The notes under the pieces are model-generated. The model did not search any database and was not told where the DNA came from. It saw nothing but the letters and a program-made list of their open reading frames with translations. From NCBI GenBank assembly GCA_002269645.1, contig NIVC01001987.1, positions 62,001-126,000 on the forward strand: DNA of 64,000 bases, in the 5' to 3' direction. Positions within the stretch are counted from its first letter, which is position 1; each line of letters begins with the position of its first letter. Position numbers and translations under genes: made by a program. Positions 1,797 to 64,000 of the stretch are shown one piece after another. This stretch comes from Macrostomum lignano. Lineage: Eukaryota.

Positions 1797-2044
1797 GGCA
1801 CCGGCGATTTGAGTGTTTCGGGGGAGCGGCTTCGACTGTGGCTGGGCAGCTGTGGGACTGTGGGCTCGAATTCATGCGTTTGACACCTCACATAGCGATA
1901 GAGTCTTTGTATATTTGCTCTACTTTTGCTTTTATGTGGGATTTTGTGTGAAGCCTGTTTTGATTTTTATTTTGCTGCGATATAAACTCGCATTGGGGCT
2001 GTCGCTGTGCGGAGCTTAATTGAAGCATAGGGTGAATCAAAATC

Positions 2045-2362
2045 AGTGGTGAGTGAACTGCAGTAAAGTAGTGAATCACACTTTGTGGTGAATGAATTGC
2101 AGTAAAGTAGTGAATCACACTTTTTGGTGAATGAATTGCAGTTAAAGTAGTGAATCACACTTTGTGGTGAATGAATTGCAGTAAAGTAGTGAATCACACT
2201 TTGTGGTGAATGAATTGCAGTAAAGTAGTGAATCACACTTTGTGGTGAATGAATGAATTGCAGTAAAGTAGTGAATCACACTTTGTGGTGAATGAATTGC
2301 AGTAAAGTAGTGAATCACACTTTGTGGTGAATGAATGAATTGCAGTAAAGTAGTGAGTGAAT
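2045..2362. repeat. 39-43-bp minisatellite downstream of IDH3A
   Basis: Unit GAATTGCAGTAAAGTAGTGAATCACACTTTGTGGTGAAT repeated about 8 times. Confidence 0.93.
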
Positions 2363-2963
2363 CACTTATTAAACTGCTGCCAAGCGGACTGTTACATTGT
2401 TTAGTTAGCTAAGCTGAGCCAGGGCAAATCTTTACGGTATTTGTGGTCCTTGTTTCAAATTTGTAGAAGCCAAACTCCTCACAATGTCGCTCTGTACCCT
2501 CTGAATCTGTTTTTCTTAAAACTTTACTGAACCACCATCGCAGAGCAGCCTCCTAAGCGCCTCATCTGTGAATTAATTGCTTATGAGAAGCAAGAATGCC
2601 TTTTGCAACTTCATTCTCAGTACTAAACTATTGTTAGTACGAGTCAATCTCTTGTCCTGCCGAGCCTTCAGCGGGATCAGGTGACAAAAGCATTGAAGTA
2701 TTTCAGACCTCTGCGACCTCTCCCCCATCATCCTGCTACTGCGGACACTGCGGACAGCTCCTGCAACTAACTGGGATGCTGTCTGGAGTGTATCTCGTTT
2801 GGCTTAGTAATTTTTCAATAAATACGAAATCTTATCCAAATTTAGCGATAATATAAATGCTATTTCTTAGCTGCAGCCCTAGTTGGATTTGTTTAGCAGA
2901 AGTCTTAGACTTGTCTTTTTATTTCTTCAATAATGATGTAGGGCTGCATTCGAGCATGAAAAC

Positions 2964-3870
2964 ATGTCCACTGCATCTGCAATGTCCACCTCATCTGCAA
3001 TGTCCACCACATCTGCTATATCCATCTCATTTGCAATGTCCACCACATCTGCTATATCCATCTCATTTGCAATGTCCACCACATCTGCTATATCCATCTC
3101 ATTTGCAATGTCCACCACATCTGCTATATCCATCTCATTTGCAATGTCGACCTCATCTGCTATATCCACCTCATCTGCAATGTCCACCACATCTGCTATA
3201 TCCACCTCATCTGCAATGTCCACCACATCTGCTATATCCACCTCATCTGCAATGTCCACCACATCTGCTATATCCACCTCATCTGCAATGTCCACCACAT
3301 CTGCTATATCCACCTCATCTGCAATGTCCACCTCATCTGCTATATCCATCTCATTTGCAATGTCCACCTCATCTGCTATATCCATCTCATTTGCAATGTC
3401 CACCTCATCTGCTGTATCCACGACATCTGTGTCCACCACATCTGCTATATCCATCTCATTTGCAATGTCCACCTCATCTGCTATATCCACCTCATCTGCA
3501 ATGTCCACCACATCTGCTATATCCATCTCATTTGCAATGTCCACCTCATCTGCTATATCCACCTTATCTGCAATGTCCACCTCATCTGCTATATCCATCT
3601 CATCTGCAATGTCCACCTCATCTGCTATATCCATCTCATTTGCAATGTCCACCTCATCTGCTGTATCCACGACATCTGTGTCCACCACATCTATGTCTGC
3701 AATGTCCACTGCATCCACCGCATGTGCAATGTCTACTGCATCCACCTAATCTACTATGTCCACGACATCTGTGTCCACCACATCTATGCCTGCAATGTCC
3801 ACTGCATCCACCGCATGTACAATGTCTACCCCATCCACCCGTCGCATGCGAGCATCCGCAATGTCCACTC
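2964..3870 (+). repeat. 18-bp-based minisatellite (ATGTCCACCACATCTGCT / ATATCCACCTCATCTGCA) running into the DM9 start
   Basis: Read directly; units contain GCAATGTCCAC, the same context as the DM9 ATG at 3861. Confidence 0.93.
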
Positions 3871-5599: not shown

Positions 5600-7140
5600 T
5601 CAGAACAGAGCCGCCAGACTCAGCAGCAGCGGCAGCCCCATCAGCTGCAGGCCGCCCCGCAGTGAGGCAGCCGTGTTGCAGTTCTGGCGGCCGCGGCAGT
5701 GGCAGTAGGTCACCTTGATCTTCTTGGTGCCGACCCGGTCAACGCAGCCCTGGACGCTGTCGGACACCAGGTTGGTGCACTGCCTGCTGACGTAGACCCG
5801 GCCTTGCACTGGAATGCAGGGGAATTGCTGTCTTCTGCCGCTTTTAAAACGGATATCAATTCATAGGATTCGGTTTTATGGATTTCTGACACTTATGCGG
5901 CATGCGCCCGAAACCCAATAGAGCAGCAGGGCAGTAGAAGAGCTTCGCAAGTTCATCCGGATATTTGCAGCAAGGCTCATGTCGATCAAGGCTTGGAAAT
6001 ACTAAAATACCTGTCATTTTTTTGCCCTGAAATACGAAAATCCAAAGTTTGCGAGAAATCGTTGAGTTTTGGATGCCTCCGACTCGCTGTGTCTTCAAGC
6101 CTTCATGTACTTCTGCTGCCTAAAGTGCGAGAGTTGGCGAAGCATTGCCCCACTTTATTTTGTGCATGTAATTATTGGCTATTTTTAGCCCTAAGTTTTC
6201 TTGGCATCTGAGGCAGTCATGTGACCCAGATTTGCTGCGTAATTAGTGAATGCGATGACTGGCTTGCGTTGCAAAGTGCGAAATCCCCTTCACCTTGCTG
6301 CACCATCTTCCTGCAGCCCACTGCCTGGCTCTTGTCAATGCGCGGATCCTCGTAGCAATTCTTGCTGTGGCTGAACTCGTCCCACGGCTCACAGTTGGCA
6401 TCCAGCATGTCGTCGCAGACAATGCAGTGAAAACTTTGGGCTCCTTTCGGCTTCGTGGCGTTTACGATGGCCCGGGGCTGAACCTCCAGCTTCTTGTCCG
6501 AGCCCTCGATCGTGTCGACGGAGAAGTCCTGGCCTGCCGAGGCGAGGCGTTTTGTGGCGTGTGAGACGGGGTGTTTTGAGGCGTGTGAGAGGCGGTGTTT
6601 TGAGGCGTGTGAGACGGGGTGGTTTGTGGCGTGTGAGACGGGGTGGTTTGAGGCGTGTTAGACGGGGTGTTTTGAGGCGTGTGAGACGGGGTGTTTTGAG
6701 GCGTGTTAAATGGGGTGTTTTGAGGCGTGTGAAACGGGGTGTTTTGAGGCGTGTTAGACGGGGTGTTTTGAGGCGTGTTAGACGGGGTGTTTTGAGGCGT
6801 GTGAGACGGCATGTTTTGTGGCGTGTGAGACGGGACATTTGGTGTGCAATGCTAAATCACTAGGGCGTATTGCATCTAGACAATTTGAAGCGTTTTTGTG
6901 ATTCCCGCAGACGGGGAACTCAAGCACGGTGCTTCTGGTATTGAAGCGTTAATATGAGGGTACCATAGTATTTGGTGTTAGGCGGTGTTAGCGCGTTCTA
7001 AGTTGGGTTTAGAGTTAGTGCTGGAGTTTAGTCAAAAACAACAAGCTGAACTCACAGTTGCCACAGCCGAGCTGCAGCAGAAGCAGCAGCGGCAGGCCAA
7101 AAAGCAGACGCTGGAATTGAGCACAATCCGTGAGTCTCAT
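5600..7140 (-). CDS. Ly6/uPAR three-finger, quiver/sleepless-like GPI-anchored protein, 3 exons, ~177 aa
   Basis: Exons 7140-7056, 6533-6294, 5808-5600 (phases 1,1; 534 nt). Signal peptide MRLTDCAQFQRLLFGLPLLLLLQLGC, Cys pattern CIVC..C..C..GCRKM..RQC..C..YCHC..NCN, hydrophobic GPI-type tail GLPLLLSLAALF. Confidence 0.85.
6547..6836. repeat. 24-bp minisatellite in Ly6 gene intron 1
   Basis: About 12 units of GGCGTGTGAGACGGGGTGTTTTGA, ending at the splice acceptor. Confidence 0.93.
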
Positions 7141-7994
7141 TTCTGACAGTGAAATTCGGTATTTAAAGTGGCCAAGTCATCAGCAATTCAATGCAGATGA
7201 TTTCACCCGAACGCAGCTAGCAACAGTAATCTGGGTTAGGAATTGCGGCCGGACCCCCGCAACTCTGCAGCTCTCTATAATGCCCGCCCAGCACTGCATG
7301 ATGGATGGAAGGCCGTGAGGACGCCAGGCTGCCCGCATTCACCGCCACCCAGATCCCCAAGTGTACGCAGCGGGTGTACACTGGCTGAACCCTTCATTCT
7401 GAATCACTCAGCCTCAAAGCCAGGCCTAATTAGTTAGCGCTGGGAAGAGAAATCGATGCCTGTGCTGCCTCATGCCAACTTTCCTGCCCCAGGCCGGGGG
7501 AGGCGGAAACTGCAGTCTGAGGCCAAGTTTTATGGCTTTCTTTGTGCAGGGCTGGGTTTATGGCCAGATCATGGCCCCGCTCTGCACTGCAAAGCCTGGA
7601 GCCGCAGATAGGCGTCAGCAGGCCTGCACCCGAGATGAATAGCAGGGGTTGAGCGTGACTATCGAGTGATTTCCCAATAAATTCGTCAAGCTGCAGTGAA
7701 TCGCAATTGGATATTATTGTAGAGTTTCGAAATTTCGCTGGGATAAAAATTAATTCATGCGATTTTCAAAGCCTCAGTCTAAGATTGATCTTATAATTAA
7801 TGAAAATAAAGCACATACTGGATAAGCATTGATGGAGCATTGGAACTCATCATATATATGCTTAATCTAAATAAAATTATGAAAATAAGGTAAATGAAAT
7901 TCCACCACTGCGACAGGAATTCAGAGCCACCTTAACTTTGGAAAATTCTAAACTTTGGTTAAATTGATTCTAGTAAATCAAAATTCTAAATGGA

Positions 7995-8205
7995 TTCCAC
8001 TCCTCTCATTCACTCACTCATCAATTCACTCACACGATCTACTCCTCTCATTCACTCACTCATCAATTCACTCACACGATCTACTCCTCTCATTCACTCA
8101 CTCATCAATTCACTCACACGATCTACTCCTCTCATTCACTCACTCATCAATTCACTCACACGATCTACTCCTCTCATTCACTCACTCATCAATTCACCAA
8201 CACGA
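7995..8205. repeat. 42-bp minisatellite between the divergent Ly6 and arrestin genes
   Basis: About 5 copies of CTACTCCTCTCATTCACTCACTCATCAATTCACTCACACGAT. Confidence 0.93.
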
Positions 8206-8791
8206 TCTACCAGTTACCGCACATCATCCGTCAGAAATCCATTGAACAGGCAATTCCATAGAAGATCTGCACCGCCACGCGTTCCTCAACTAAGTGCGAA
8301 TTCGCACCGCAACTCGTGATGCCTCACGCAACCGGGGCCAGCGCAGCAATAATTAAAACTCTTATCATAAAAAATAAACTCAGTCAAAGAGAGAGAAGCG
8401 CAGAGCATTCATTCGCAAAGCAGAAGCAGAAGCAGGGAAGCAGCAGCAGCAGAGGCCTGGGTCGCATCGAGTTGTTCAGTCACGCAACTGCAGCACCGCC
8501 ACCAGATCAGATGTCGAGCTTGCAGTCGGCAGTTGGGTTTCTCCCCACAACTTGGGTGCTGCTGCTTCGCGAGGTGCTGCAGATCAGAGTTCGGGATTAG
8601 CCGATGGAGGCATCGAAACGTCTGTCAAAGTGATCACAGGTGTGGCAGGTGGGGCATGTGAGGCAGCAGCCCGGAAGAAACTCGACACCAGGAGGAGCTT
8701 TGCTATAAAATTGGGGCGCGCTCTGCTGCTCACAGGAGCAGAAGAAATCTCCCCAGCAGCCCGGCAGCCCGCAGCAGCAGAAGCAGCCACA

Positions 8792-50300: not shown

Positions 50301-52167
50301 TTTAGAGAGTAGTCTAGAGTAACTTCTTTCCTTTTTACCTGTGTTACCTGCAACAACTCTGGGGCGGCGCAAGTGACTCTGAAATGCTTCTTGGCCTTGG
50401 TGCCGTTTTCGTGTCCATTTTATCTGAGTGCCGCTCTGCCTATCGCTCCTGCGCAGGTCCGCCTACCCGTACGAGGGCGTCAAGCACGGCGGCCGGCTCG
50501 TCTCCTGGGCCGACTGGGCCGCCGACCTCGCCAAGCAGTTCGAGCCGCGCTTCTGGCTGCCCGAGTCCGGCCACTACCGCGACCGCTGGCTGCCGGACGT
50601 GGATCCCGCCGACGACCCCGAAGGCCGGCAGTTGCGGCCAAACTTTCTAGTTGCCATGGTGACGGCACCATTCTTGTTCAGCGCCGAGCGAGCCCGCGCC
50701 GCCCTGGAGCTGACGGAGCGCCGGCTGCTTGGCCCGCTCGGCATGCGGACGCTCGACCCCGCCGACCCGGCCTACCGCGGCCGCTACGACAACTCGGACG
50801 ACTCCGGCGACTTCAGCGTGGCCGGCGGCTTCTCCTATCACAATGGGCCCGAGTGGCTGTGGCCGGTGGGCTATTACCTGCGCGCCCGGCTCGCTTTCTC
50901 GGAGCCGCCTTCCGGCCAGGTCGGTCACGTCCAGGCCGTGCTGGCCCGCTGCCAGGCCGCCATGGAGGCCTCCGACTGGCACAGCCTGCCCGAGCTCACC
51001 AACCGGGATGGAGAGGTGAGGCTTCAGCAGCTGTTTCTGCTCATATTGATTAGTTGTAGCTTCCATCTAATCACTGCTCAAAAGTACCGCTGCAGCTACA
51101 ACAGTATGAAAAACCGCCTACTGGAGAGTAGCAAGTAAAGAATCCAGAGAGCAGAGCATGTGTATGTGTAAGGGGGCAGAGCATGTGTAAGGGGCAGAGT
51201 GTGTGTAGGAGGGCAGAGCATGTGTAAGGGGCAGAGTGTGTGTAGGGGGGCAGAGCATGTGTAAGGGGGCAGACCATGTGTAAGGGGGCAGACCATGTGT
51301 AAGGGGGCAGAGCATGTGTAAGGGGCAGAGCATGTGTAAGGGGGCAGAGCATGTGTAAGGGGCAGAGCATGTGTAGGGGGGCAGAGCATGTGTAAGGGGC
51401 AGAGTGTGTGTAGGGGGGCAGAGCATGTGTAAGGGGCAGAGCATGTGTAAGGGGGCAGAGCATGTGTAGGGGGGCAGAGCATGTGTAAGGGGCAGAGCAT
51501 GTGTAAGGGGGCAGAGCATGTGTAAGGCCGTAAGGGGCAGAGTGTGTGTAGGGGGGCAGAGCATGTGTAAGGGGCAGAGCATGTGTAAGGGGCAGAGCAT
51601 GTGTAAGGGGGCAGAGCATGTGTAAGGGGGCAGAGTGTGTGTAGTGGGGGCAGAGCATGTGTAGGGGGCAGAGTGTGTTTAGGGGGCAGAGCATGTGTAG
51701 GGGGCAGAGTGTGTGTAGGGGGGCAGAGTTGGTTCTATTTTGTGCGCAGCCACATTTACTTGAAGCTTGTGCACAAAAGTCGGCTGGGAGATCGGCCGTC
51801 ATGCGATTCACACCCGATGAGGCACAGGCAGTCTAGAAAGTCACCCTGTACACCCCGTATACGCGCGTGTGTGAGTCTGTTGAATTGTCTCAACGATGTC
51901 GCCCAAGGTTTTCACAACCCTCCTGCGAATGTTTTTCATTCCTTCATAGTTCACCGTCCAAGCTGGTCTTGACCTTTTTGTACTCGCTATAAGATATTCG
52001 CTTCAAGATGCTTTATTAACTACTTGTTAGTAGGCGATCTCGTGCAATGACCAACTCCAACCCCCCCCAATGAACTGCAGCCCTGCCCACACAGCTGCCA
52101 AGCCCAGGCCTGGAGCATGGCCACAATGTTCGAGGCAGCCTGCGACCTGCGCAACCTGAAGCTGTGA
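41397..52167 (+). CDS. AGL: Glycogen debranching enzyme (4-alpha-glucanotransferase / amylo-1,6-glucosidase), 11 exons, ~1472 aa
   Basis: Exons 41397-41798, 42258-42716, 43889-44268, 44703-45272, 46959-47220, 47453-47875, 48046-48392, 48661-49297, 49602-49894, 50457-51015, 52081-52167 join in frame (4419 nt). Motifs [63 protein letters not shown]. Confidence 0.97.
42770..43840. repeat. 15-bp minisatellite (TTGGGTTTGAG(C/T)AGC)n filling AGL intron 2
   Basis: About 70 units. Confidence 0.96.
45305..46912. repeat. 72-bp minisatellite filling AGL intron 4
   Basis: About 22 units; the 24-aa periodicity of the ORF track confirms the period. Confidence 0.96.
51145..51727. repeat. ~22-bp minisatellite (GGGGCAGAGCATGTGTAAGG)n in AGL intron 10
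   Basis: Read directly; the G-run length varies. Confidence 0.94.
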
Positions 52168-53381: not shown

Positions 53382-54440
53382 TCAGCCAGTGGCAAGTGTA
53401 AATCCTTCGCTGTAAATAAGGTGGTCAAAGTCCTTATGAATCCACAATATATCGCAGTCCTCCCACAGTTCTGCATTTTTGACATCCAGCGCTGACAGGC
53501 CCGGAGTCCGCCAAGCGGAGTAGTTTCTGCTGGCGAAGAAGTCAACTATCGTTGCGCTGTCAGTTCCGACCATGTGCTGCCTCAGAAACTCCATCTGCAC
53601 AAAAACCACTCTGAACTGGGTGAACAGACAGCCCGACGTCCTCAGGAAGTCCGCCTCTCCGCCCTCGATGTCCAGCTTGATGACGACGTTCCTCGTGCCG
53701 ATGAGGCCGCACAGCCGCTCGCTCCTTACCGGCATCACGGGGATCGAGTCGACCACGGCTCTACCGAACTTGGTCGCTCCGCCGACGTTGCAGTCGTCAG
53801 GGAAGTTGAGGAAGCTCAGCTGGTCTCCGGATCCGATGAAGTTCCACACGAGCGCCGCATCGAGCGCCGCCGCGTTGAGGCTCAGCCGCAATCGGAGCAG
53901 GTTGCGGATGTTCGCGTCCAGCGACACGACGGGCAGCCCGAGTCTCGCGGCCAGCAGGCTGTAGACACCGATGTTGCAACCCGCGTCGAGGAAGGTCGCG
54001 TTCGGCACCTTCAGAGCCAGTCTCATGGTTGTATGGACCAGCTCACGCTCCCATTCGTGACTGGTCTTGATGGCCTCAGAAATCATGTCTTTCCCAGGGT
54101 AGACGAACATTTGCAGCAGATTTTCGTTGAAATCGCGGATTCGAGCTGGCACGCTGCCCTTGCGGATAATCTGCATAATCTGCGGCACGAACGGGGTGGC
54201 TAGTTTGCACAGCGGGAAACCAGCCGAAGTTTGTTTGTAGGCCTCGGCATTGACGCATAGGCGATGTCGCAGTTTCGGGTCCAGAAAGCTCATGTTCTTC
54301 AGTTCTGAGTAGGCGACGCAATTTTTCGGTCGCATTTCTACGCGTGCGCTGTTCGAGACAGAGTTGTACAGTCTGACGCAGAGATAGGCGGTGCTGCAGG
54401 CTAGTAGTAACAGCACCCTCAGGTACCTGAGGGTCAGCAT
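53382..54440 (-). CDS. FkbM-family (Methyltransf_21-like) SAM methyltransferase copy 1, intronless, N-terminal signal anchor, 352 aa
   Basis: Motif I FLDAGCNIGVYSL, FkbM-type VIKLDIEGGE, and a hydrophobic N-terminus LRVLLLLACSTAYLCV. Confidence 0.85.
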   Translation of the reverse strand: MLTLRYLRVLLLLACSTAYLCVRLYNSVSNSARVEMRPKNCVAYSELKNMSFLDPKLRHRLCVNAEAYKQTSAGFPLCKLATPFVPQIMQIIRKGSVPARIRDFNENLLQMFVYPGKDMISEAIKTSHEWERELVHTTMRLALKVPNATFLDAGCNIGVYSLLAARLGLPVVSLDANIRNLLRLRLSLNAAALDAALVWNFIGSGDQLSFLNFPDDCNVGGATKFGRAVVDSIPVMPVRSERLCGLIGTRNVVIKLDIEGGEADFLRTSGCLFTQFRVVFVQMEFLRQHMVGTDSATIVDFFASRNYSAWRTPGLSALDVKNAELWEDCDILWIHKDFDHLIYSEGFTLATG

Positions 54441-57400
54441 GGTCCTTCCAACTTGCCCTGGGCGCTGTACCCGCTGGTTTATGAATTTCTCAAGTCTGAG
54501 ATCAGTTGCTGAGAGCTAGCTGCCTTGGCTTTATTACAGTGACTCCCAGATCCACGTCCCCGTTGCCTCCAACTGCAACTGCTTGGCTGGCAGCTGTTGA
54601 AAAAAGTAGTGGAGTACAACCTATGCGGACAGCGAAGCAATAGAAACTAAGACAGTGCTGCCTCAGCCCTCTACAGAGGCAAATCGATTTTCCTTTTCTA
54701 CAGTGAAGCGTCAGAACTGCCGCAAACGGTCTATTCGAAATGATATCCATTGCCAAAAATGCACGATTGCTGGAGACGTGCTTAATTTTATTTTATTGCG
54801 ATTTCACTTGCTTCTACGCGTGTTTAACAGAATTTCTGTGGTGTATTCGAGTGCAGCACTCACTCAGACCATTTGCTGGCACAGGGCACGGGGCTACAGT
54901 CCAGTAAGTCTTGCGGATGCAGAGTCACTATAGTAGGGTGGACTGGCAGCAGATTAGGGAACAAGAACCGTTAGTATTAAGAGGACGCGACACGTCTGTC
55001 TCGCTAGTATCAATAGTTATGAAAATCGTAATGGGGACTCGATTGCGGTTTGAAATGCATCAGTTAGGATAACGAATTTACAGTTTTTGCCAAGATTTGA
55101 CATTTTCTCACATTTTGAGACTCTCCAAGACTTTCGAAAAGCCTATGAAGACCTACTGCACATATTTTTTTATTCCGAGGTGATTTCACCAGTTAAGTAA
55201 CTTTGTCATGAAACTAAAGTTACCAGAGAGACCCAGAAATCGAACAAAACTGTAGTGCTTTCTAGCCAGCATACGCTCGTACACCCCATTTGATTTATTT
55301 GCCTGGCAAGTGTTTATACATGTAAATTCAATCTTAACAGTTTCAAAGTAGGTGCTTAAAGTCCTTGTGCAGCCAAATTATATCGCCATCCTCCCAACTT
55401 TTAGCAGCCGACAAGTTCAGCCGCTCCAGGGTCTGCGCTCTCCATGCGCTGTATTTGCGACTGATAAAAAAATCTGTTACAAAAGCCCTGTCATCCGCAG
55501 GCATGTGCCTTTCCAAGATCTCTATTTGAACTGCAGCCACTCTGAACTGGCTGAACAGACAGCCCGACGTCCTCAGGAAGTCCGCCTCTCCGCCCTCGAT
55601 GTCCAGCTTGATGACGACGTTCCTCGTGCCGATGAGGCCGCACAGCCGCTCGCTCCTTACCGGCATCACGGGGATCGAGTCGACCACGGCTCTACCGAAC
55701 TTGGTCGCTCCGCCGACGTTGCAGTCGTCAGGGAAGTTGAGGAAGCTCAGCTGGTCTCCGGATCCGATGAAGTTCCACACGAGCGCCGCATCGAGCGCCG
55801 CCGCGTTGAGGCTCAGCCGCAATCGGAGCAGGTTGCGGATGTTCGCGTCCAGCGACACGACGGGCAGCCCGAGTCTCGCGGCCAGCAGGCTGTAGACACC
55901 GATGTTGCAACCCGCGTCGAGGAAGGTCGCGTTCGGCACCTTCAGAGCCAGTCTCATGGTTGTATGGACCAGCTCACGCTCCCATTCGTGACTGGTCTTG
56001 ATGGCCTCAGAAATCATGTCTTTCCCAGGGTAGACGAACATTTGCAGCAGATTTTCGTTGAAATCGCGGATTCGAGCTGGCACGCTGCCCTTGCGGATAA
56101 TCTGCATAATCTGCGGCACGAACGGGGTGGCTAGTTTGCACAGCGGGAAACCAGCCGAAGTTTGTTTGTAGGCCTCGGCATTGACGCATAGGCGATGTCG
56201 CAGTTTCGGGTCCAGAAAGCTCATGTTCTTCAGTTCTGAGTAGGCGACGCAATTTTTCGGTCGCATTTCTACGCGTGCGCTGTTCGAGACAGAGTTGTAC
56301 AGTCTGACGCAGAGATAGGCGGTGCTGCAGGCTAGTAGTAACAGCACCCTCAGGTACCTGAGGGTCAGCATGGTCCTTCCAACTTGCCCTGGGCGCTGTA
56401 CCCGCTGGTTTATGAATTTCTCAAGTCTGAGATCAGTTGCTGAGAGCTAGCTGCCTTGGCTTTATTACAGTGACTCCCAGATCCACGTCCCCGTTGCCTC
56501 CAACTGCAACTGCTTGGCTGGCAGCTGTTGAAAAAAGTAGTGGAGTACAACCTATGCGGACAGCGAAGCAATAGAAACTAAGACAGTGCTGCCTCAGCCC
56601 TCTACAGAGGCAAATCGATTTTCCTTTTCTACAGTGAAGCGTCAGAACTGCCGCAAACGGTCTATTCGAAATGATATCCATTGCCAAAAATGCACGATTG
56701 CTGGAGACGTGCTTAATTTTATTTTATTGCGATTTCACTTGCTTCTACGCGTGTTTAACAGAATTTCTGTGGTGTATTCGAGTGCAGCACTCACTCAGAC
56801 CATTTGCTGGCACAGGGCACGGGGCTACAGTCCAGTAAGTCTTGCGGATGCAGAGTCACTATAGTAGGGTGGACTGGCAGCAGATTAGGGAACAAGAACC
56901 GTTAGTATTAAGAGGACGCGACACGTCTGTCTCGCTAGTATCAATAGTTATGAAAATCGTAATGGGGACTCGATTGCGGTTTGAAATGCATCAGTTAGGA
57001 TAACGAATTTACAGTTTTTGCCAAGATTTGACATTTTCTCACATTTTGAGACTCTCCAAGACTTTCGAAAAGCCTATGAAGACCTACTGCACATATTTTT
57101 TTATTCCGAGGTGATTTCACCAGTTAAGTAACTTTGTCATGAAACTAAAGTTACCAGAGAGACCCAGAAATCGAACAAAACTGTAGTGCTTTCTAGCCAG
57201 CATACGCTCGTACACCCCATTTGATTTATTTGCCTGGCAAGTGTTTATACATGTAAATTCAATCTTAACAGTTTCAAAGTAGGTGCTTAAAGTCCTTGTG
57301 CAGCCAAATTATATCGCCATCCTCCCAACTTTTAGCAGCCGACAAGTTCAGCCGCTCCAGGGTCTGCGCTCTCCATGCGCTGTATTTGCGACTGATAAAA

Positions 57401-57897
57401 AAATCTGTTACAAAAGCCCTGTCATCCGCAGGCATGTGCCTTTCCAAGATCTCTATTTGAACTGCAGCCACTCTGAACTGGCTGAACAGACAGCCCGACG
57501 TCCTCAGGAAGTCCGCCTCTCCGCCCTCGATGTCCAGCTTGATGACGACGTTCCTCGTGCCGATGAGGCCGCACAGCCGCTCGCTCCTTACCGGCATCAC
57601 GGGGATCGAGTCGACCACGGCTCTACCGAACTTGGTCGCTCCGCCGACGTTGCAGTCGTCAGGGAAGTTGAGGAAGCTCAGCTGGTCTCCGGATCCGATG
57701 AAGTTCCACACGAGCGCCGCATCGAGCGCCGCCGCGTTGAGGCTCAGCCGCAGCCGGAGCAGGTTGCGGATGTTCGCGTCCAGCGACACGACGGGCAGCC
57801 CGAGTCTCGCGGCCAGCAGGCTGTAGACACCGATGTTGCAACCCGCGTCGAGGAAGGTCGCGTTCGGCACCTTCAGAGCGAGTCTCATGGTTGTATG
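53606..57897. repeat. 1931-bp tandem segmental duplication (2.2 units)
   Basis: 53606-55966 is nearly identical to 55537-57897; gene starts (54440/56371) and gene ends (55343/57274) are both offset by 1931. Confidence 0.95.
55343..56371 (-). CDS. FkbM-family methyltransferase copy 2 (chimera: N-terminus of copy 1, C-terminus of copy 3), 342 aa
   Basis: Same motifs; identical to copy 1 through the core and to copy 3 from FSQF onward. Confidence 0.85.
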   Translation of the reverse strand: MLTLRYLRVLLLLACSTAYLCVRLYNSVSNSARVEMRPKNCVAYSELKNMSFLDPKLRHRLCVNAEAYKQTSAGFPLCKLATPFVPQIMQIIRKGSVPARIRDFNENLLQMFVYPGKDMISEAIKTSHEWERELVHTTMRLALKVPNATFLDAGCNIGVYSLLAARLGLPVVSLDANIRNLLRLRLSLNAAALDAALVWNFIGSGDQLSFLNFPDDCNVGGATKFGRAVVDSIPVMPVRSERLCGLIGTRNVVIKLDIEGGEADFLRTSGCLFSQFRVAAVQIEILERHMPADDRAFVTDFFISRKYSAWRAQTLERLNLSAAKSWEDGDIIWLHKDFKHLL

Positions 57898-58380
57898 CAC
57901 AATTTCTGGCTCCCAATTCTTGCTTGTCATGATCTGCATAGAAATTGCGTCGTTCTCAGGATACACAAACATTTGGACAAACTCATTCCTCATATCAAGG
58001 AGTTTCGCGACCAGACTTCCTCTCCTGACAACGTCCAGCAACTGAATATTGAACGGGTGTTGCAGCCGACACAGCGGGTAGCTCCCTCCAGCTCTCACAA
58101 ATGCTTTTTCATCTTTGCAGAGGATGCTCCTGAACTTAGGGTGACGAAAGTCAAATTCGCGCAGCTCCAGGTGGCTGTGGCACCTTACATGCTGAGCTGC
58201 TCCGCTGCTGATCTCCACCAGAGCGTCGCAAAGCGTAGAGTCCAACCTGCAGCTGATGCTGTTGAATTTCGAGCTCTTCTGAGTCATTTTTGCTGGCTGC
58301 CTCTCTTCCAATAGCGCCCAGAAGGCGACGCAGCAGGCAGTAAGTAGGAGAGCCAGAATTTTCTGCCTTGAGAGAGCCAT
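57274..58380 (-). CDS. FkbM-family methyltransferase copy 3, 368 aa
   Basis: Same core; distinct N-terminus MALSRQKILALLLTACCVAFWALL. Confidence 0.85.
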   Translation of the reverse strand: MALSRQKILALLLTACCVAFWALLEERQPAKMTQKSSKFNSISCRLDSTLCDALVEISSGAAQHVRCHSHLELREFDFRHPKFRSILCKDEKAFVRAGGSYPLCRLQHPFNIQLLDVVRRGSLVAKLLDMRNEFVQMFVYPENDAISMQIMTSKNWEPEIVHTTMRLALKVPNATFLDAGCNIGVYSLLAARLGLPVVSLDANIRNLLRLRLSLNAAALDAALVWNFIGSGDQLSFLNFPDDCNVGGATKFGRAVVDSIPVMPVRSERLCGLIGTRNVVIKLDIEGGEADFLRTSGCLFSQFRVAAVQIEILERHMPADDRAFVTDFFISRKYSAWRAQTLERLNLSAAKSWEDGDIIWLHKDFKHLL

Positions 58381-59699
58381 GCCGGATGTCAGATCCCAGA
58401 CTTGGCTGACTTGACGCGGAGTTTAATGGCTGCGCCTCTGCTCTTTATCTTGCCATTCTGGCATTCCAAATCGATTAAAGTCAGGTAAAGCTTTGCAGCT
58501 GGTACAACACATTGTAGTATTGGTTTAGGTGCTTGCGTACAGAAATTGCTGACTTTATGACCAAAGAGTTTTAGATTGGACATCAAGACTTTGCGTCAAA
58601 ATAGAAAATCATTTCTGGAACTACTGGCGGCGTTTGAGCATTCTATTCCCGGAACTTCATAATTCCGGCTTCAGCCCACTTTTTCTGAAGTCATTTAATA
58701 GGAATTTTTCCGGCCTTAGCTTTCCCCATCTCCTCCCAATTCAATTCGGTGGGGGCAGAGGAACGATTGACAATACTGTGGCTCCACTGGGTTGCGTCAC
58801 TCTTGATTAGCTAACGGTCTTATGCGTTTTTATTGACTGACTCTATAAGTTTAATGTACAAGTACTGTACTCATAGCCTGCCCGCCGCGAGCTTGTAGCT
58901 TATTGCACTTGAATGAGTTTATGTTTTGGCGCGGCAAGATGTCTCTCAGTTTGTGAGTTGCAATGTAAATGCACGAGGCTCGAGACGGTGTAGCAAGTCG
59001 TGAATCTCTGCGTACCCAATTTGCCTTTTATTTCTCACTTCGACACGTAATTCTCAATACGGCAGGAATACGAGGCGATCTCGCAGTGGTAGCTGGTCTT
59101 GTGTGGAATGAAAGGCTCAACCCTCCCGCTCCAATATGCTGCAGTCACTGCCGTTTGGCTTGCACCGTCTCAGTACGGACTGCTGCAACGATTAAACACA
59201 ATTGCGCGTAACCAGCTGCCATGGCACCACATGCTTCACTAGTGCTTTGCCGTATGCTTCTCTTCTGACTCTGAACCTTTCTACAGTGTACCCCTGGAGA
59301 CTCTGGGGCACTGCGCGGCATGCAATGAGCTTAGGAAAATGCGTTGATTGGCACGACTCTGCCGTTTTCCAATGCTGCATGCGCAGCTCGCTAATATCAT
59401 TTATGACTTAGCGCCGGACTCAGGAGCAAGAGAAGTTCCTATTAGTAAAAGGTTTTTCGTAAGCTCTCCTTGAGACACGTATGCAGCCTTCTAACCGAAT
59501 CTTTTTTCGATCAGCAGCCAATAGGGTTCGATGAGCTTGAATCAGAGCAACAGTCCTGGCTGGCGAGTGAGCAGAGTTGGAATAATAAAAATGCATCGCA
59601 CTGAAATGCTTCTGTCTGAAGCTCACGAAGCCAGTCGTGTTGTGACCAGAGTTCAAAGTGACTGCAGGATTTGGGACAACTGAAGTTCACTTCCCACTG

Positions 59700-60932
59700 A
59701 TGGCTCGGCCAAAGCAAAATATTATGCTGCTCGCCTTGTGCGCCACGGCCCTCTTCATGGCGTACATTTTGTACTCCAGGGTACGATGGCGCGACCATAT
59801 CAAACCGCGGTCTTTGAAAAAGCATTTCATTTCCGATGCCCATGAACCAAATCCAATCCAAATCGTAGAAACTCCAAAGGAAAGTGGAAGACAGATTTCG
59901 AGTAGGAAAAACGAAACAGCGATCGCGAAGACTGTTGCTACGCGACCGCTGCAAACAGAGTTGCAAACAAGAGCACCGGCAACAATGAAAACAAACTGCA
60001 AAATCTACAATGAGCTGCGCAATGTGGACTTCCAGCAGCCGGCGCTCCGCCACGTCCTGTGCAGCGGCGCCAAGGCGTACGAGAAAGTGGCGGGCGGGTT
60101 CCCCATGTGCCGGCTGCAGAACCCGTTCGATGACAGAATCCTCGAGGTTGTGCGGTCCGGCAGCTCGACCGCCGATCTGCTGGACATGAATAACACCAAG
60201 GTGAAGATGTTTGTCTACTCTGAGATAGACAGAATTTCTGAGGCCATCAAGACCAGTCACGAATGGGAGCGTGAGCTGGTCCATACAACCATGAGACTGG
60301 CTCTGAAGGTGCCGAACGCGACCTTCCTCGACGCGGGTTGCAACATCGGTGTCTACAGCCTGCTGGCCGCGAGACTCGGGCTGCCCGTCGTTTCGCTGGA
60401 CGCGAACATCCGCAACCTGCTCCGGCTGCGGCTGAGCCTCAACGCGGCGGCGCTCGATGCGGCGCTCGTGTGGAACTTCATCGGATCCGGAGACCAGCTG
60501 AGCTTCCTCAACTTCCCTGACGACTGCAACGTCGGCGGAGCGACCAAGTTCGGCAGAGCCGTGGTCGACTCGATCCCCGTGATGCCGGTAAGGAGCGAGC
60601 GGCTGTGCGGCCTCATCGGCACGAGGAACGTCGTCATCAAGCTGGACATCGAGGGCGGAGAGACGGACTTCCTGAGGACGTCGGGCTGTCTGTTCAGCCA
60701 GTTCAGAGTGGTTTTTGTGCAGATGGAGTTTCTGAGGCAGCACATGGTCGGAACTGACAGCGCAACGATAGTGGACTTCTTCGCCAGCAGAAACTACTCC
60801 GCCTGGCGGACTCCGGGCCTGTCAGCGCTGGATGTCAAAAATGCAGAACTGTGGGAGGACTGCGATATATTGTGGATTCATAAGGACTTTGACCACCTTA
60901 TTTACAGCGAAAGATTTACACTTGCCATTTAA
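59700..60932 (+). CDS. FkbM-family methyltransferase copy 4 (inverted), ~410 aa from ATG 59700
   Basis: Same core, copy-1-type C-terminus, and a distinct longer N-terminus MARPKQNIMLLALCATALFMAYILY. Confidence 0.85.
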   Translation: MARPKQNIMLLALCATALFMAYILYSRVRWRDHIKPRSLKKHFISDAHEPNPIQIVETPKESGRQISSRKNETAIAKTVATRPLQTELQTRAPATMKTNCKIYNELRNVDFQQPALRHVLCSGAKAYEKVAGGFPMCRLQNPFDDRILEVVRSGSSTADLLDMNNTKVKMFVYSEIDRISEAIKTSHEWERELVHTTMRLALKVPNATFLDAGCNIGVYSLLAARLGLPVVSLDANIRNLLRLRLSLNAAALDAALVWNFIGSGDQLSFLNFPDDCNVGGATKFGRAVVDSIPVMPVRSERLCGLIGTRNVVIKLDIEGGETDFLRTSGCLFSQFRVVFVQMEFLRQHMVGTDSATIVDFFASRNYSAWRTPGLSALDVKNAELWEDCDILWIHKDFDHLIYSERFTLAI

Positions 60933-63103: not shown

Positions 63104-64000
63104 TCAGAGCCAGTTGGCATCGGCCCAGCCGGCGATCAGCGTCCAGGTCTTGTTCTGGCCGTCCTTGCTGATGTGGAGGCCCGTGACGTCGACGCTAACG
63201 GTGAAGGTGTCATTGTACTTCATGCCATATGTGGGGCACAGCAGAGTGGCGTTGTTGGTGCCGAAGTCCTGCCACGGAATCTCAATGGCGCGGCGGCCCA
63301 GAGCCAGGTTGGTCGTGTAGTCCTCCTCCGAGATGGCGAACCAGCTCCAACCGCCGTCAATGGACTTCATGCGGCTCCGTTCATCGTAGGCGGTGCCGTA
63401 GATGCTCGAGTCGGTCGGCAGGACGAAGCCAATCTGGCTGATCACGCTGTCCAATGCTTCCCAGCTGGCGCCAAAGTCCACAGAGCGAGAGCAGTGGGCC
63501 CGACCCCCGGGCCTATAGAGCATGCAAGCGTAAATGGCGCCCTCTTTGGGACTGATGACGTAGCTGCGACTGTGGCTGAAGCCAGTGGCCTTGGTCGTCA
63601 CTTCGTAGCATGCTTCAGCAGGTGTCACGTCGGTTGTCTGCTGACAACCATAAAATTCCACGCGCAGCGAGCGGCTGTAGGTCTTTGGCGAGCCAGTCAA
63701 AGGCAGTATCCTGATGTACCGACCTACAATGGCCTTGTTTAGCTTCACGTAAGCCGAGCCGCCAGAGTAAGTAGCCGTGTAAACCTGAAAGTTATCGAAA
63801 TTTGAAAGCAGCTTGTATTGATGCGCTGTTTTCTGGCAACAATGGCTGCCTGCACAGCTTCTAATATAGTTAAAAATATTGCGCAACTTACCTCCTTGGT
63901 GTTGGTGTTGTTGCTGTTGACATCAAACCATAGAAGACCCTCCTCGCTGTATTGAAACCAGAAGGTATCCACCTTGTTGTTGGTATCATCCTTATGCGAC
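63104..64000 (-). CDS. 3' part of a protein with an F5/8 type C (discoidin) domain followed by Asp-box (BNR) repeats
   Basis: Exons >64000-63892 and 63784-63104 join in frame. Discoidin-like FWFQYSEEGLLW and GRYIRILP..LRVEFYGC; Asp boxes SRSVDFGASW and KSIDGGWSW. The 5' end lies outside the window. Confidence 0.75.

What the first reader, a model, noticed from the sequence alone, without database searches (positions are those of the whole stretch)
53382..60932. Modular FkbM methyltransferase cluster with a homogenised catalytic core and interchangeable N- and C-terminal modules
Seen: four intronless genes share a ~430-bp core that is almost identical, while the flanks come as three very divergent N-modules (N1, N1, N2, N3) and two C-modules (A, B, B, A). 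The inverted copy 4 (60234-60927) matches copy 1 (54083-53390) over ~694 bp with roughly 8-10 substitutions by eye, yet their upstream halves are only distantly alike. Breakpoints are sharp (ISEAIKT, HTTMRL, FSQF). Inference: recurrent gene conversion or unequal exchange shuffles putative substrate-recognition modules around a fixed SAM-binding core, a combinatorial diversification system.
Basis: partly seen in the sequence, partly recalled or inferred. Interest (0 to 1): 0.82.

Follow-up and report, generated by a model that had tools for sequence, protein, structure and literature searches.

The report
Mosaic flatworm methyltransferase gene cluster
Three old neighbouring methyltransferase genes of the flatworm Macrostomum lignano have had their middle ~410 bp made identical by gene conversion, and a single unequal crossover in that shared stretch made a fourth, hybrid gene; this is an ordinary way for gene families to evolve, not a special diversification system.

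Summary
Four intact single-exon ORFs (53382-60932) encode type-II-anchored FkbM-family methyltransferases. They share a 412-bp core with 0-6 differences. The N-terminal parts (three types) and C-terminal parts (two types) are saturated at silent sites (dS 1.5-2.3).

The organism is Macrostomum lignano or a very close relative. A syntenic contig of assembly GCA_002269645.1, about 98.5% identical, carries the same mosaic but only three genes.

Copy 2 is not an independent combination. Window 53621-55821 is 100% identical to 55552-57752, a perfect 1931-bp tandem duplication. Copy 2 equals copy 1 upstream and copy 3 downstream of a 270-bp crossover interval inside the core.

So the history is three old paralogues, DNA-level homogenisation of the core (and of core plus C-part between inverted copies 1 and 4), and one recent unequal crossover or an assembly artefact.

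The "modules" are homologous, unconverted parts of old paralogues under purifying selection. The C-part is an integral piece of the methyltransferase fold. Variation inside the tracts is almost all private to single copies.

Gene conversion and unequal exchange are supported. A dedicated combinatorial diversification system is not. The likely function, Golgi glycan O-methylation, is inferred only.

The parts
53382..54440 (-). Copy 1 (N1-core-A), 352 aa, type-II-anchored FkbM-family methyltransferase
   Evidence: Intact ORF. PF05050 23.5 bits and TIGR01444 E 5e-9. AF2 model has pLDDT 89 with a TM helix at 3-29. Orthologue LX in L001 at 5664-6722.
55343..56371 (-). Copy 2 (N1-core-B), 342 aa, exact chimera of copy 1 and copy 3
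   Evidence: 55552-56371 is identical to c1 53621-54440, and 55343-55821 is identical to c3 57274-57752. No counterpart in L001.
57274..58380 (-). Copy 3 (N2-core-B), 368 aa
   Evidence: Intact ORF. Orthologue LY in L001 at 7628-8734, differing by 2 aa.
59700..60932 (+). Copy 4 (N3-core-A), 410 aa from the ATG at 59700 (the ORF opens at a GTG at 59658)
   Evidence: Intact ORF. Orthologue LZ = P0001, BOX15_Mlig015726g1.
53606..54017 (-). Homogenised 412-bp core in copy 1. Equivalents: 55537-55948 (c2), 57468-57879 (c3), 60300-60711 (c4, + strand)
   Evidence: Only 8 variable columns among 7 sequences in alignment nt cols 601-1012. Core dS is 0-0.04, against 1.25-2.3 in the flanks. It coincides with the TIGR01444 match at c1 aa 149-281.
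53621..57752 (.). Perfect tandem repeat, period 1931 bp, 2.14 copies. Each unit runs from mid-core through N1, the 902-bp spacer and C-part B to the next mid-core
   Evidence: An ungapped comparison at offset 1931 gives a 2201-bp run with no mismatch.
55552..55821 (-). 270-bp interval containing the crossover that made copy 2. It is identical in c1 (53621-53890), c2 and c3 (57483-57752)
   Evidence: It is bounded by c1-specific AT at alignment cols 726-727 and c3-type G at col 998.
53390..54110 (-). Left arm of the inverted repeat shared by copies 1 and 4 (junction + core + C-part A)
   Evidence: 721 bp, 97.9% identical, no gaps, against 60927-60207. In L001 the repeat is 824 bp and 98.9% identical, extending 91 bp past the stop codon.
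60207..60927 (+). Right arm of the inverted repeat (copy 4). It is cut at 60927 by a 539-bp indel relative to L001
   Evidence: The window lacks L001 11301-11839, and the C-terminus reads YSERFTLAI* instead of YSEGFTLATG*.

Best explanation
This is a small cluster of old paralogous genes in the flatworm Macrostomum lignano. Each encodes a type-II membrane-anchored (secretory-pathway) FkbM-family SAM-dependent methyltransferase.

The ancestral state, still seen in a second assembly, is three genes: N2-core-B and N1-core-A in tandem, and N3-core-A inverted. Interlocus gene conversion overwrote the middle of all three with one sequence (412 bp). Between inverted copies 1 and 4 it also overwrote the 60 bp upstream, the whole C-terminal part and about 90 bp of 3' flank. 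That left sharp borders against flanks that are saturated at silent sites.

The identical cores then served as substrate for one non-allelic homologous (unequal) crossover between copies 3 and 1. It duplicated a 1931-bp unit and produced the hybrid N1-core-B gene (copy 2). That gene carries no mutation of its own.

Shown: the mosaic, the DNA-level homogenisation, the exact chimera, and its absence from the other assembly.

Inferred: the order of events, that copy 2 is real rather than an assembly error, and the function. The function is probably O-methylation of glycans in the Golgi lumen, with the N-terminal subdomain and C-terminal strands contributing to acceptor choice.
For: Organism and synteny:
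- P0001 is from M. lignano.
- Locus L001 (GCA_002269645.1, NIVC01000543.1) is collinear at 98.1-98.6% identity, with a glycogen-debranching-enzyme gene on one side and an F5/8-C gene on the other.
- L001 has three intact ORFs with the same mosaic and its own private SNPs, so the mosaic is not an artefact of one assembly.

Homogenisation:
- Core dS is 0-0.04, against 1.25-2.3 in the flanks.
- Four-fold degenerate sites differ at 1/77 in the core and 15/25 in the flanks, P = 1.3e-10.
- Unlinked paralogues are only 51-60% identical in the same core.

Chimera:
- A 2201-bp run is perfectly identical at offset 1931.
- The crossover interval is bounded by diagnostic sites.

Family and topology:
- PF05050 and TIGR01444 matches.
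- phmmer hits to proteins named FkbM family methyltransferase at E 1e-33 to 1e-41.
- Invariant D-G-N and K-D-E-G-E motifs.
- AF2 model with pLDDT 89, N-terminal TM helix and Rossmann-type sheet.
- Foldseek hits to class I SAM methyltransferases.

Functional context:
- Planarian N-glycans are heavily and selectively O-methylated (PMC5936828).
- The glycan methyltransferases of C. elegans were still unknown in 2019 (PMC6422873).
Against: - Copy 2 has no private mutation and no unique junction sequence. A spurious extra pass through the repeat by an assembler would give the same picture. The only other assembly available lacks it.
- Both homogenised tracts show zero fixed paralogue-specific differences across the two haplotypes. 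This fits either two events just before the split or continuing concerted evolution, and I cannot separate the two.
- The function rests on topology and family only. HMM scores sit at the curated thresholds, and no solved structure is close (best TM normalised to the query is about 0.4).
- No expression data were available.
Confidence: 0.78

Rival explanations
1. A selected combinatorial diversification system. Recurrent conversion and unequal exchange are maintained because they shuffle substrate-recognition modules around a fixed catalytic core and so generate varied methyltransferase specificities.
For: - A new N/C combination (N1-B) does exist, and it is polymorphic between the two assemblies.
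- The homogenised core coincides with the TIGR01444 SAM-binding domain.
- Between the two haplotypes the N-parts carry 12 nonsynonymous and 0 synonymous differences, against 3-5 to 7 in core+C. This hints at selection on the N-parts.
- Methylated glycans are known targets of lectin-based defence (background cited in PMC6422873).
Against: - Only one shuffled product exists, explained by a single crossover.
- N and C parts are old homologous regions with long-term dN/dS of 0.2-0.35.
- The C-part is an integral part of the fold and carries conserved E283.
- Variation in the tracts is private to single copies, so exchange since the split has been rare.
- There are no extra donor fragments.
- Unlinked paralogue loci are single-copy.
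- The 12:0 count is small: P = 0.048 against neutrality.
Confidence: 0.08
2. Assembly or polishing artefact. The identical cores are collapsed or over-polished repeats, and copy 2 is a mis-assembled extra loop.
For: - The M. lignano genome is a repeat-rich neopolyploid with three subgenomes at 1.4-2.4% SNP divergence, and 36% of Mlig_3_7 assembly length lies in chimeric scaffolds (PMC10733133).
- Copy 2 is 100% identical to its parents and is absent from L001.
Against: - The three-gene mosaic is reproduced in an independent assembly or haplotype with different private SNPs in each core.
- Polishing cannot turn roughly 50-60%-identical DNA into 99% identity with sharp borders.
- All ORFs are intact.
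- For copy 2 alone, the artefact reading cannot be excluded.
Confidence: 0.12
3. The core is identical only because of extreme purifying selection on the catalytic domain.
For: The core holds the conserved SAM-binding and K-D-E-G-E motifs.
Against: - Silent four-fold sites are identical at 76 of 77.
- Identity extends into the non-coding 3' flank in L001.
- Unlinked paralogues share only 51-60% aa identity in the core.
Confidence: 0.01

Closest known systems
Hybrid genes made by unequal crossing-over and gene conversion in tandem paralogue arrays: human red/green opsin OPN1LW/OPN1MW, glycophorin GYPA/GYPB/GYPE hybrids, CYP21A2/CYP21A1P, CYP2D6/2D7 (from my own knowledge, not tested here)
   Same: A stretch of near-identity between neighbouring paralogues acts as substrate for non-allelic homologous recombination. 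The result is a tandem duplication with a chimeric gene whose halves match the two parents. Conversion tracts have sharp borders.
   Different: Here the parents are very old paralogues (flank dS > 1.5) with only a 412-bp island of identity, whereas the human examples are similar along their whole length. An inverted third copy shares a longer tract.
Bacterial FkbM-family methyltransferases (PF05050 / TIGR01444; the founding member is the FK506 31-O-methyltransferase; many sit in O-antigen and flagellin-glycan clusters)
   Same: Same domain family. Motif I D-x-G-x-N-x-G and the K-x-D-x-E-G-x-E motif are conserved, and the fold is class I Rossmann.
   Different: The flatworm proteins add an N-terminal signal anchor, a stem and a Cys-containing subdomain of about 90 aa that the bacterial 280-aa proteins lack. 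HMM scores are at threshold. The substrate is unknown.
Concerted evolution of multigene families (rDNA, histone, globin and MHC-type interlocus conversion; from my own knowledge)
   Same: Paralogues are homogenised at the DNA level regardless of coding constraint.
   Different: Homogenisation here is confined to a sub-genic tract. Apart from one site, there is no clear sign of continuing exchange since the two haplotypes or subgenomes split.

Membership tests
FkbM-family SAM-dependent methyltransferase (PF05050 / TIGR01444) | Match to the family HMM at or above the curated cut-off | tested here: inconclusive
   PF05050: c1 23.5 and c4 23.1 bits (cut-off 22.7, passed); c2 22.3 and c3 22.0 bits (just below). 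TIGR01444: 35.9-36.7 bits against a cut-off of 37.7, E 5e-9. Single-sequence phmmer reaches proteins named FkbM family methyltransferase at E 1e-33 to 1e-41.
FkbM-family SAM-dependent methyltransferase (PF05050 / TIGR01444) | Conserved motif I (D-x-G-x-N-x-G) and K-x-D-x-E-G-x-E motif | tested here: met
   D151, G153, N155, K254, D256 and E261 are invariant, and G157, E258, G259 and E283 nearly invariant, in a 60-sequence alignment with bacterial members.
FkbM-family SAM-dependent methyltransferase (PF05050 / TIGR01444) | Class I (Rossmann-like) methyltransferase fold | tested here: met
   The AF2 model has pLDDT 89.1 and pTM 0.85 with alternating strand/helix. All top Foldseek PDB hits are class I SAM methyltransferases (prob 1.0; TM 0.3-0.4 by query, 0.5-0.6 by target).
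FkbM-family SAM-dependent methyltransferase (PF05050 / TIGR01444) | SAM-dependent methyl transfer | not testable with these tools
   Needs an enzyme assay.
Interlocus gene conversion / concerted evolution | Tract identical at silent sites, flanked by diverged homologous sequence with sharp borders | tested here: met
   dS is 0-0.04 in the tract and 1.25-2.3 in the flanks. Four-fold sites differ at 1/77 against 15/25. Borders resolve to within a few nucleotides.
Interlocus gene conversion / concerted evolution | Tract is independent of coding and domain borders and can include non-coding DNA | tested here: met
   The c1/c4 tract runs 91 bp past the stop codon in L001. The 3' border of the core falls inside the fold, just before strand 276-284 with conserved E283.
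Interlocus gene conversion / concerted evolution | Paralogues within a haplotype are more alike than orthologues between haplotypes (ongoing exchange) | tested here: inconclusive
   L001 paralogues differ by 0.2-0.5% and window paralogues by 0.7-1.5%; orthologues differ by 0.5-1.0%. Only one site (col 855) is shared among window copies. All others are private.
Chimeric gene from non-allelic homologous recombination (unequal crossover) | Tandem duplication whose unit starts and ends in homologous sequence, with the hybrid equal to parent A on one side and parent B on the other | tested here: met
   The 1931-bp unit is 100% identical over 2201 bp. The crossover interval is 270 bp inside the core.
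Chimeric gene from non-allelic homologous recombination (unequal crossover) | Presence/absence difference between haplotypes or assemblies | tested here: met
   L001 has one unit and three genes.
Chimeric gene from non-allelic homologous recombination (unequal crossover) | Supported by reads spanning the duplication, so not an assembly error | not testable with these tools
   No reads are available. Exact-protein look-ups for c1, c2 and c3 found nothing on record.
Dedicated diversification system (cassette-based or programmed recombination) | Archive of silent or partial donor cassettes, or many alternative module combinations | tested here: not met
   tblastn finds only the four full-length genes in the 64-kb window and three in L001. 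Only one non-parental combination exists.
Golgi glycan O-methyltransferase (functional class; the animal enzymes are not identified) | Type II signal-anchor topology with a lumenal catalytic domain | tested here: met
   There is a short basic N-terminus followed by a hydrophobic helix (AF2 H3-29), a low-confidence stem at 29-53, and conserved Cys residues in the N-subdomain.
Golgi glycan O-methyltransferase (functional class; the animal enzymes are not identified) | Methylates glycan acceptors | not testable with these tools
   Context only. Planarian N-glycans are heavily O-methylated (PMC5936828), and nematode glycan methyltransferases were unknown in 2019 (PMC6422873).

The most novel reading that the evidence does not exclude
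The cluster encodes the long-sought animal Golgi glycan O-methyltransferases, and the mosaic is adaptive. A conserved SAM-binding core is kept uniform by conversion while the N-terminal subdomain evolves under positive selection (12 nonsynonymous to 0 synonymous differences between haplotypes). Unequal crossover then yields polymorphic enzyme repertoires that vary glycan methylation patterns, for instance against lectin-type toxins or pathogens.
Probability: 0.08. Interest if true: 0.65.

Novelty: new member of a known kind. Interest (0 to 1): 0.3.

Why it matters
As genome evolution this is a clean textbook-type case. A sub-genic island of conversion between very old paralogues becomes the substrate for an unequal crossover, which creates a hybrid gene. 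It adds no new principle.

Its practical value is twofold. First, it flags a presence/absence difference, or a possible mis-assembly, in a difficult neopolyploid genome. Second, it points to a family of secretory-pathway FkbM methyltransferases as candidates for the unidentified enzymes that O-methylate flatworm glycans, and perhaps nematode and mollusc glycans. M. lignano is transgenic- and RNAi-tractable, so this can be tested there.

Tried and rejected
- A Sawyer-type longest-concordant-run permutation test detects the c1/c4 tract (P < 1e-4) but not the three-way core. The core has almost no polymorphic sites to condition on. I replaced it with silent-site contrasts.
- The sequence search of the PDB gave nothing significant; the best hit was E 0.18. 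The fold search gave only generic class I methyltransferases, so there is no substrate clue.
- Attempts to fetch a third homeologous locus all failed. Exact look-ups for c1, c2 and c3 were not on record. The neighbouring F5/8-C protein cluster and the P0001 cluster each have one member on one contig. A search with the glycogen-debranching-enzyme C-terminal exon returned nothing at E <= 1e-40 (unexplained).
- Loci of the unlinked paralogue P0002 are single-copy, so the phenomenon is not general to the family.
- Cluster look-ups for distant homologues gave almost no taxon names.
- Literature searches found no paper on animal FkbM or Methyltransf_21 glycan methyltransferases, and none on gene conversion in M. 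lignano.
- Purifying selection as the cause of core identity is rejected.
- Polishing or collapse as the cause of the mosaic is rejected, because the second assembly reproduces it.

Full report
**What is in the sequence.** Between 53382 and 60932 there are four intact, uninterrupted ORFs:
- c1, 53382-54440 (-), 352 aa
- c2, 55343-56371 (-), 342 aa
- c3, 57274-58380 (-), 368 aa
- c4, 59658-60932 (+); the ORF opens at a GTG, and the likely start is the ATG at 59700 (MARPKQN..., 410 aa)

tblastn finds no further copies or fragments in the 64-kb window.
- The core is 412 bp: c1 54017-53606, c2 55948-55537, c3 57879-57468, c4 60300-60711. It has 3-6 differences between window copies.
- There are three N-terminal types (N1, N1, N2, N3) and two C-terminal types (A, B, B, A).
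BLAST extends it to 721 bp with 15 mismatches.
- The borders lie at ISEAIKT (c1/c4), after HTTMRL (c3 joins) and after FSQFRV (A and B diverge).

**Not chance, and not protein-level constraint.**
- Nei-Gojobori dS is 1.5-2.0 in the alignable N-part. It is 1.25 in the 20-codon junction where c3 differs from c1 and c4, 0-0.04 in the core, and 2.2 between C-parts A and B. Flank dN/dS is 0.2-0.35.
- At four-fold degenerate sites c1 and c3 differ at 1 of 77 in the core and 15 of 25 in the flanks (Fisher P = 1.3e-10).
- Unlinked paralogues from the same species (P0002, P0003) are only 51-60% identical to the core at the protein level. The N-parts of c1, c3 and c4 (37-49% identity) are barely closer to each other than to those unlinked paralogues (29-42%).

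So these are old paralogues whose middle has been overwritten at the DNA level. That is interlocus gene conversion.

**Organism and an independent second copy of the locus.**
- The best protein hit is M. lignano BOX15_Mlig015726g1 (P0001), the orthologue of c4.
- Its contig is locus L001 (GCA_002269645.1, NIVC01000543.1). It is collinear with the window at 98.1-98.6% identity, with a glycogen-debranching-enzyme gene upstream and an F5/8-type-C gene downstream.
- That divergence matches the 1.4-2.4% SNP divergence reported between the three subgenomes of this neopolyploid (PMC10733133). The window is therefore another subgenome, haplotype or assembly of the same locus. I could not tell which.
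- L001 contains three intact ORFs, of which only LZ is annotated: LX (N1-core-A), LY (N2-core-B) and LZ (N3-core-A).
- L001 shows the same mosaic with its own private SNPs. That excludes collapse or over-polishing in one assembly as the cause.

**Copy 2 is one unequal crossover, or one assembly error.**
- Window 53621-55821 is 100% identical to 55552-57752. This is a perfect tandem repeat of period 1931 bp, 2.14 copies.
- c2 equals c1 from 55552 upward: core, N1 and the whole upstream spacer. It equals c3 from 55821 downward: core and C-part B.
- The exchange lies in the 270-bp interval 55552-55821. That interval is bounded by the c1-specific AT doublet (alignment cols 726-727) and the c3-type G at col 998.
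- This is the expected duplication product of non-allelic homologous recombination between the cores of c3 and c1. Read on the minus strand: N2-core-B - spacer - N1-core | B - spacer - N1-core-A.
- L001 has a single unit and no chimera.
- c2 has no mutation of its own, so it is either very recent or an artefact. The crossover leaves no unique junction, so only reads linking N1 to B across the 412-bp core can decide.
- The four observed 'combinations' therefore reduce to three parental genes plus one event.

**How often has exchange happened?**
- Inside the homogenised tracts, no site distinguishes one paralogue from another across both haplotypes. Almost all variation is private to a single copy:
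  - w1 has 4 private changes and w4 has 4-5.
  - LZ has 2, LY has 1, and LX and w3 have none.
- The one exception is col 855. It is T in w1, w2 and w3 and C elsewhere, and it lies inside the crossover interval, so it may be a by-product of that same event.
- Orthologue divergence in the core (0.5-1.0%) is like that of the flanks.
- The cores were thus identical at about the time the two haplotypes split. Since then they have mostly diverged independently.
- That fits a few events near the split. It also fits continuing but slow concerted evolution, given that L001 paralogues differ by only 0.2-0.5%. It does not indicate rapid, recurrent shuffling.
- The c1/c4 tract is an inverted repeat of 721 bp here. 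In L001 it is 824 bp and reaches 91 bp past the stop codon. Recombination between the arms would invert the interval without creating new N/C combinations, and the two assemblies are collinear.

**What the proteins are.**
- All four match the FkbM methyltransferase domain at threshold level. PF05050 scores 22.0-23.5 bits against a cut-off of 22.7. TIGR01444 gives E 5e-9 at 36.7 bits against 37.7, covering c1 149-281, which is essentially the homogenised core.
- An exhaustive phmmer search finds 1218 relatives at E <= 0.001. Among them are proteins that their sources name FkbM family methyltransferase, at E 1e-33 to 1e-41.
- In a 60-sequence alignment with bacterial members, D151/G153/N155 (motif I) and K254/D256/E261 are invariant. 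E283 is nearly invariant.
- An AlphaFold2 model of c1 (pLDDT 89.1, pTM 0.85) shows the following:
  - an N-terminal helix at 3-29, which is the signal anchor
  - a low-confidence stem
  - a confidently folded N-subdomain at 54-142, with Cys residues conserved across the family
  - a Rossmann-type sheet
- The 'C-module' (278-352) contains strands 276-284 (with E283), 306-311 and 328-334. It is an integral third of the catalytic fold, not a separable domain.
- Foldseek against the PDB returns only generic class I SAM methyltransferases (TM 0.3-0.4 by query). Sequence search of the PDB returns nothing significant.

**Likely function (inferred).**
- The topology is that of a Golgi or secretory-pathway enzyme.
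- Planarian N-glycans are extensively and selectively O-methylated (PMC5936828).
- A 2019 review states that the glycan methyltransferases of C. elegans are unknown (PMC6422873).
- My literature searches found no paper assigning animal FkbM-domain proteins to this role.
- I therefore propose lumenal glycan O-methylation as the most likely activity, at about 40% confidence. SAM would bind in the homogenised core. The N-subdomain and C-terminal strands would shape the acceptor site, as is usual for class I methyltransferases (general knowledge). No substrate evidence was obtainable.

**Comparison and verdict.**
- Mechanistically the closest known cases are hybrid genes in tandem paralogue arrays: red/green opsins, glycophorins and CYP21 (from my own knowledge).
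- The unusual aspect here is only that the parents are very old and share just a sub-genic island of identity.
- Gene conversion and unequal exchange are supported. A dedicated combinatorial diversification system is not.
- One hint keeps a weak adaptive reading alive. Between the two haplotypes the N-parts carry 12 nonsynonymous and 0 synonymous differences, against 3-5 to 7 in core plus C. Fisher P is 0.0007-0.005, and P(0 of 12) is 0.048 against neutrality. The counts are small.
- Novelty: a new member of a known kind. Interest is modest.

Noticed in passing
N-terminal parts of c1, c3, c4 (window 54018-54440, 57880-58380, 59700-60299) against L001 orthologues: Between the two haplotypes or subgenomes the N-parts differ by 12 nonsynonymous and 0 synonymous changes, while core+C has 3-5 nonsynonymous and 7 synonymous. 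Five of the 12 cluster in alignment columns 168-182, just upstream of the conversion-tract border. This may reflect positive selection or relaxed constraint, but the numbers are small.
   Followed up: partly
window 60927/60928 (L001 11301-11839): The window lacks 539 bp that are present in L001 immediately at the 3' end of c4. This changes the last residues (YSERFTLAI* instead of YSEGFTLATG*) and shortens the c1/c4 inverted repeat from 824 to 721 bp.
   Followed up: partly
window 51164-51728 (L001 ~2021-3477): A 19-bp minisatellite (ATGTGTAAGGGGGCAGAGC, about 30 copies) between the glycogen-debranching-enzyme gene and the cluster is roughly 2.5 times longer in L001. The whole window is unusually rich in minisatellites (43 TRF rows with periods of 14-118 bp).
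   Followed up: no
P0007 (BOX15_Mlig019506g3, unlinked M. lignano paralogue): The annotated 504-aa protein contains a perfect internal duplication (aa 93-220 repeated at 224-349) covering part of the N-subdomain and the first part of the core. It is either another partial tandem duplication in this family or a gene-model or assembly artefact.
   Followed up: partly
L001 5664-6722 and 7628-8734: Two intact FkbM ORFs (orthologues of c1 and c3) are not annotated in the NCBI record of GCA_002269645.1. Only the c4 orthologue is called, and as a partial gene.
   Followed up: yes
window 50428-51138: A 172-aa query from the apparent last exon of the glycogen-debranching-enzyme gene found no protein at E <= 1e-40 in the large protein database, although L001 carries a called 1474-aa GDE gene over the homologous DNA. 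This is unexplained. The cause may be a different splice model or frame, or a limitation of the word index.
   Followed up: no
window 63104-64000 (-): This is the 3' part of an F5/8-type-C (discoidin) domain gene, cut by the window end. Its L001 orthologue is a 326-aa two-exon gene whose protein cluster has a single member on a single contig.
   Followed up: partly
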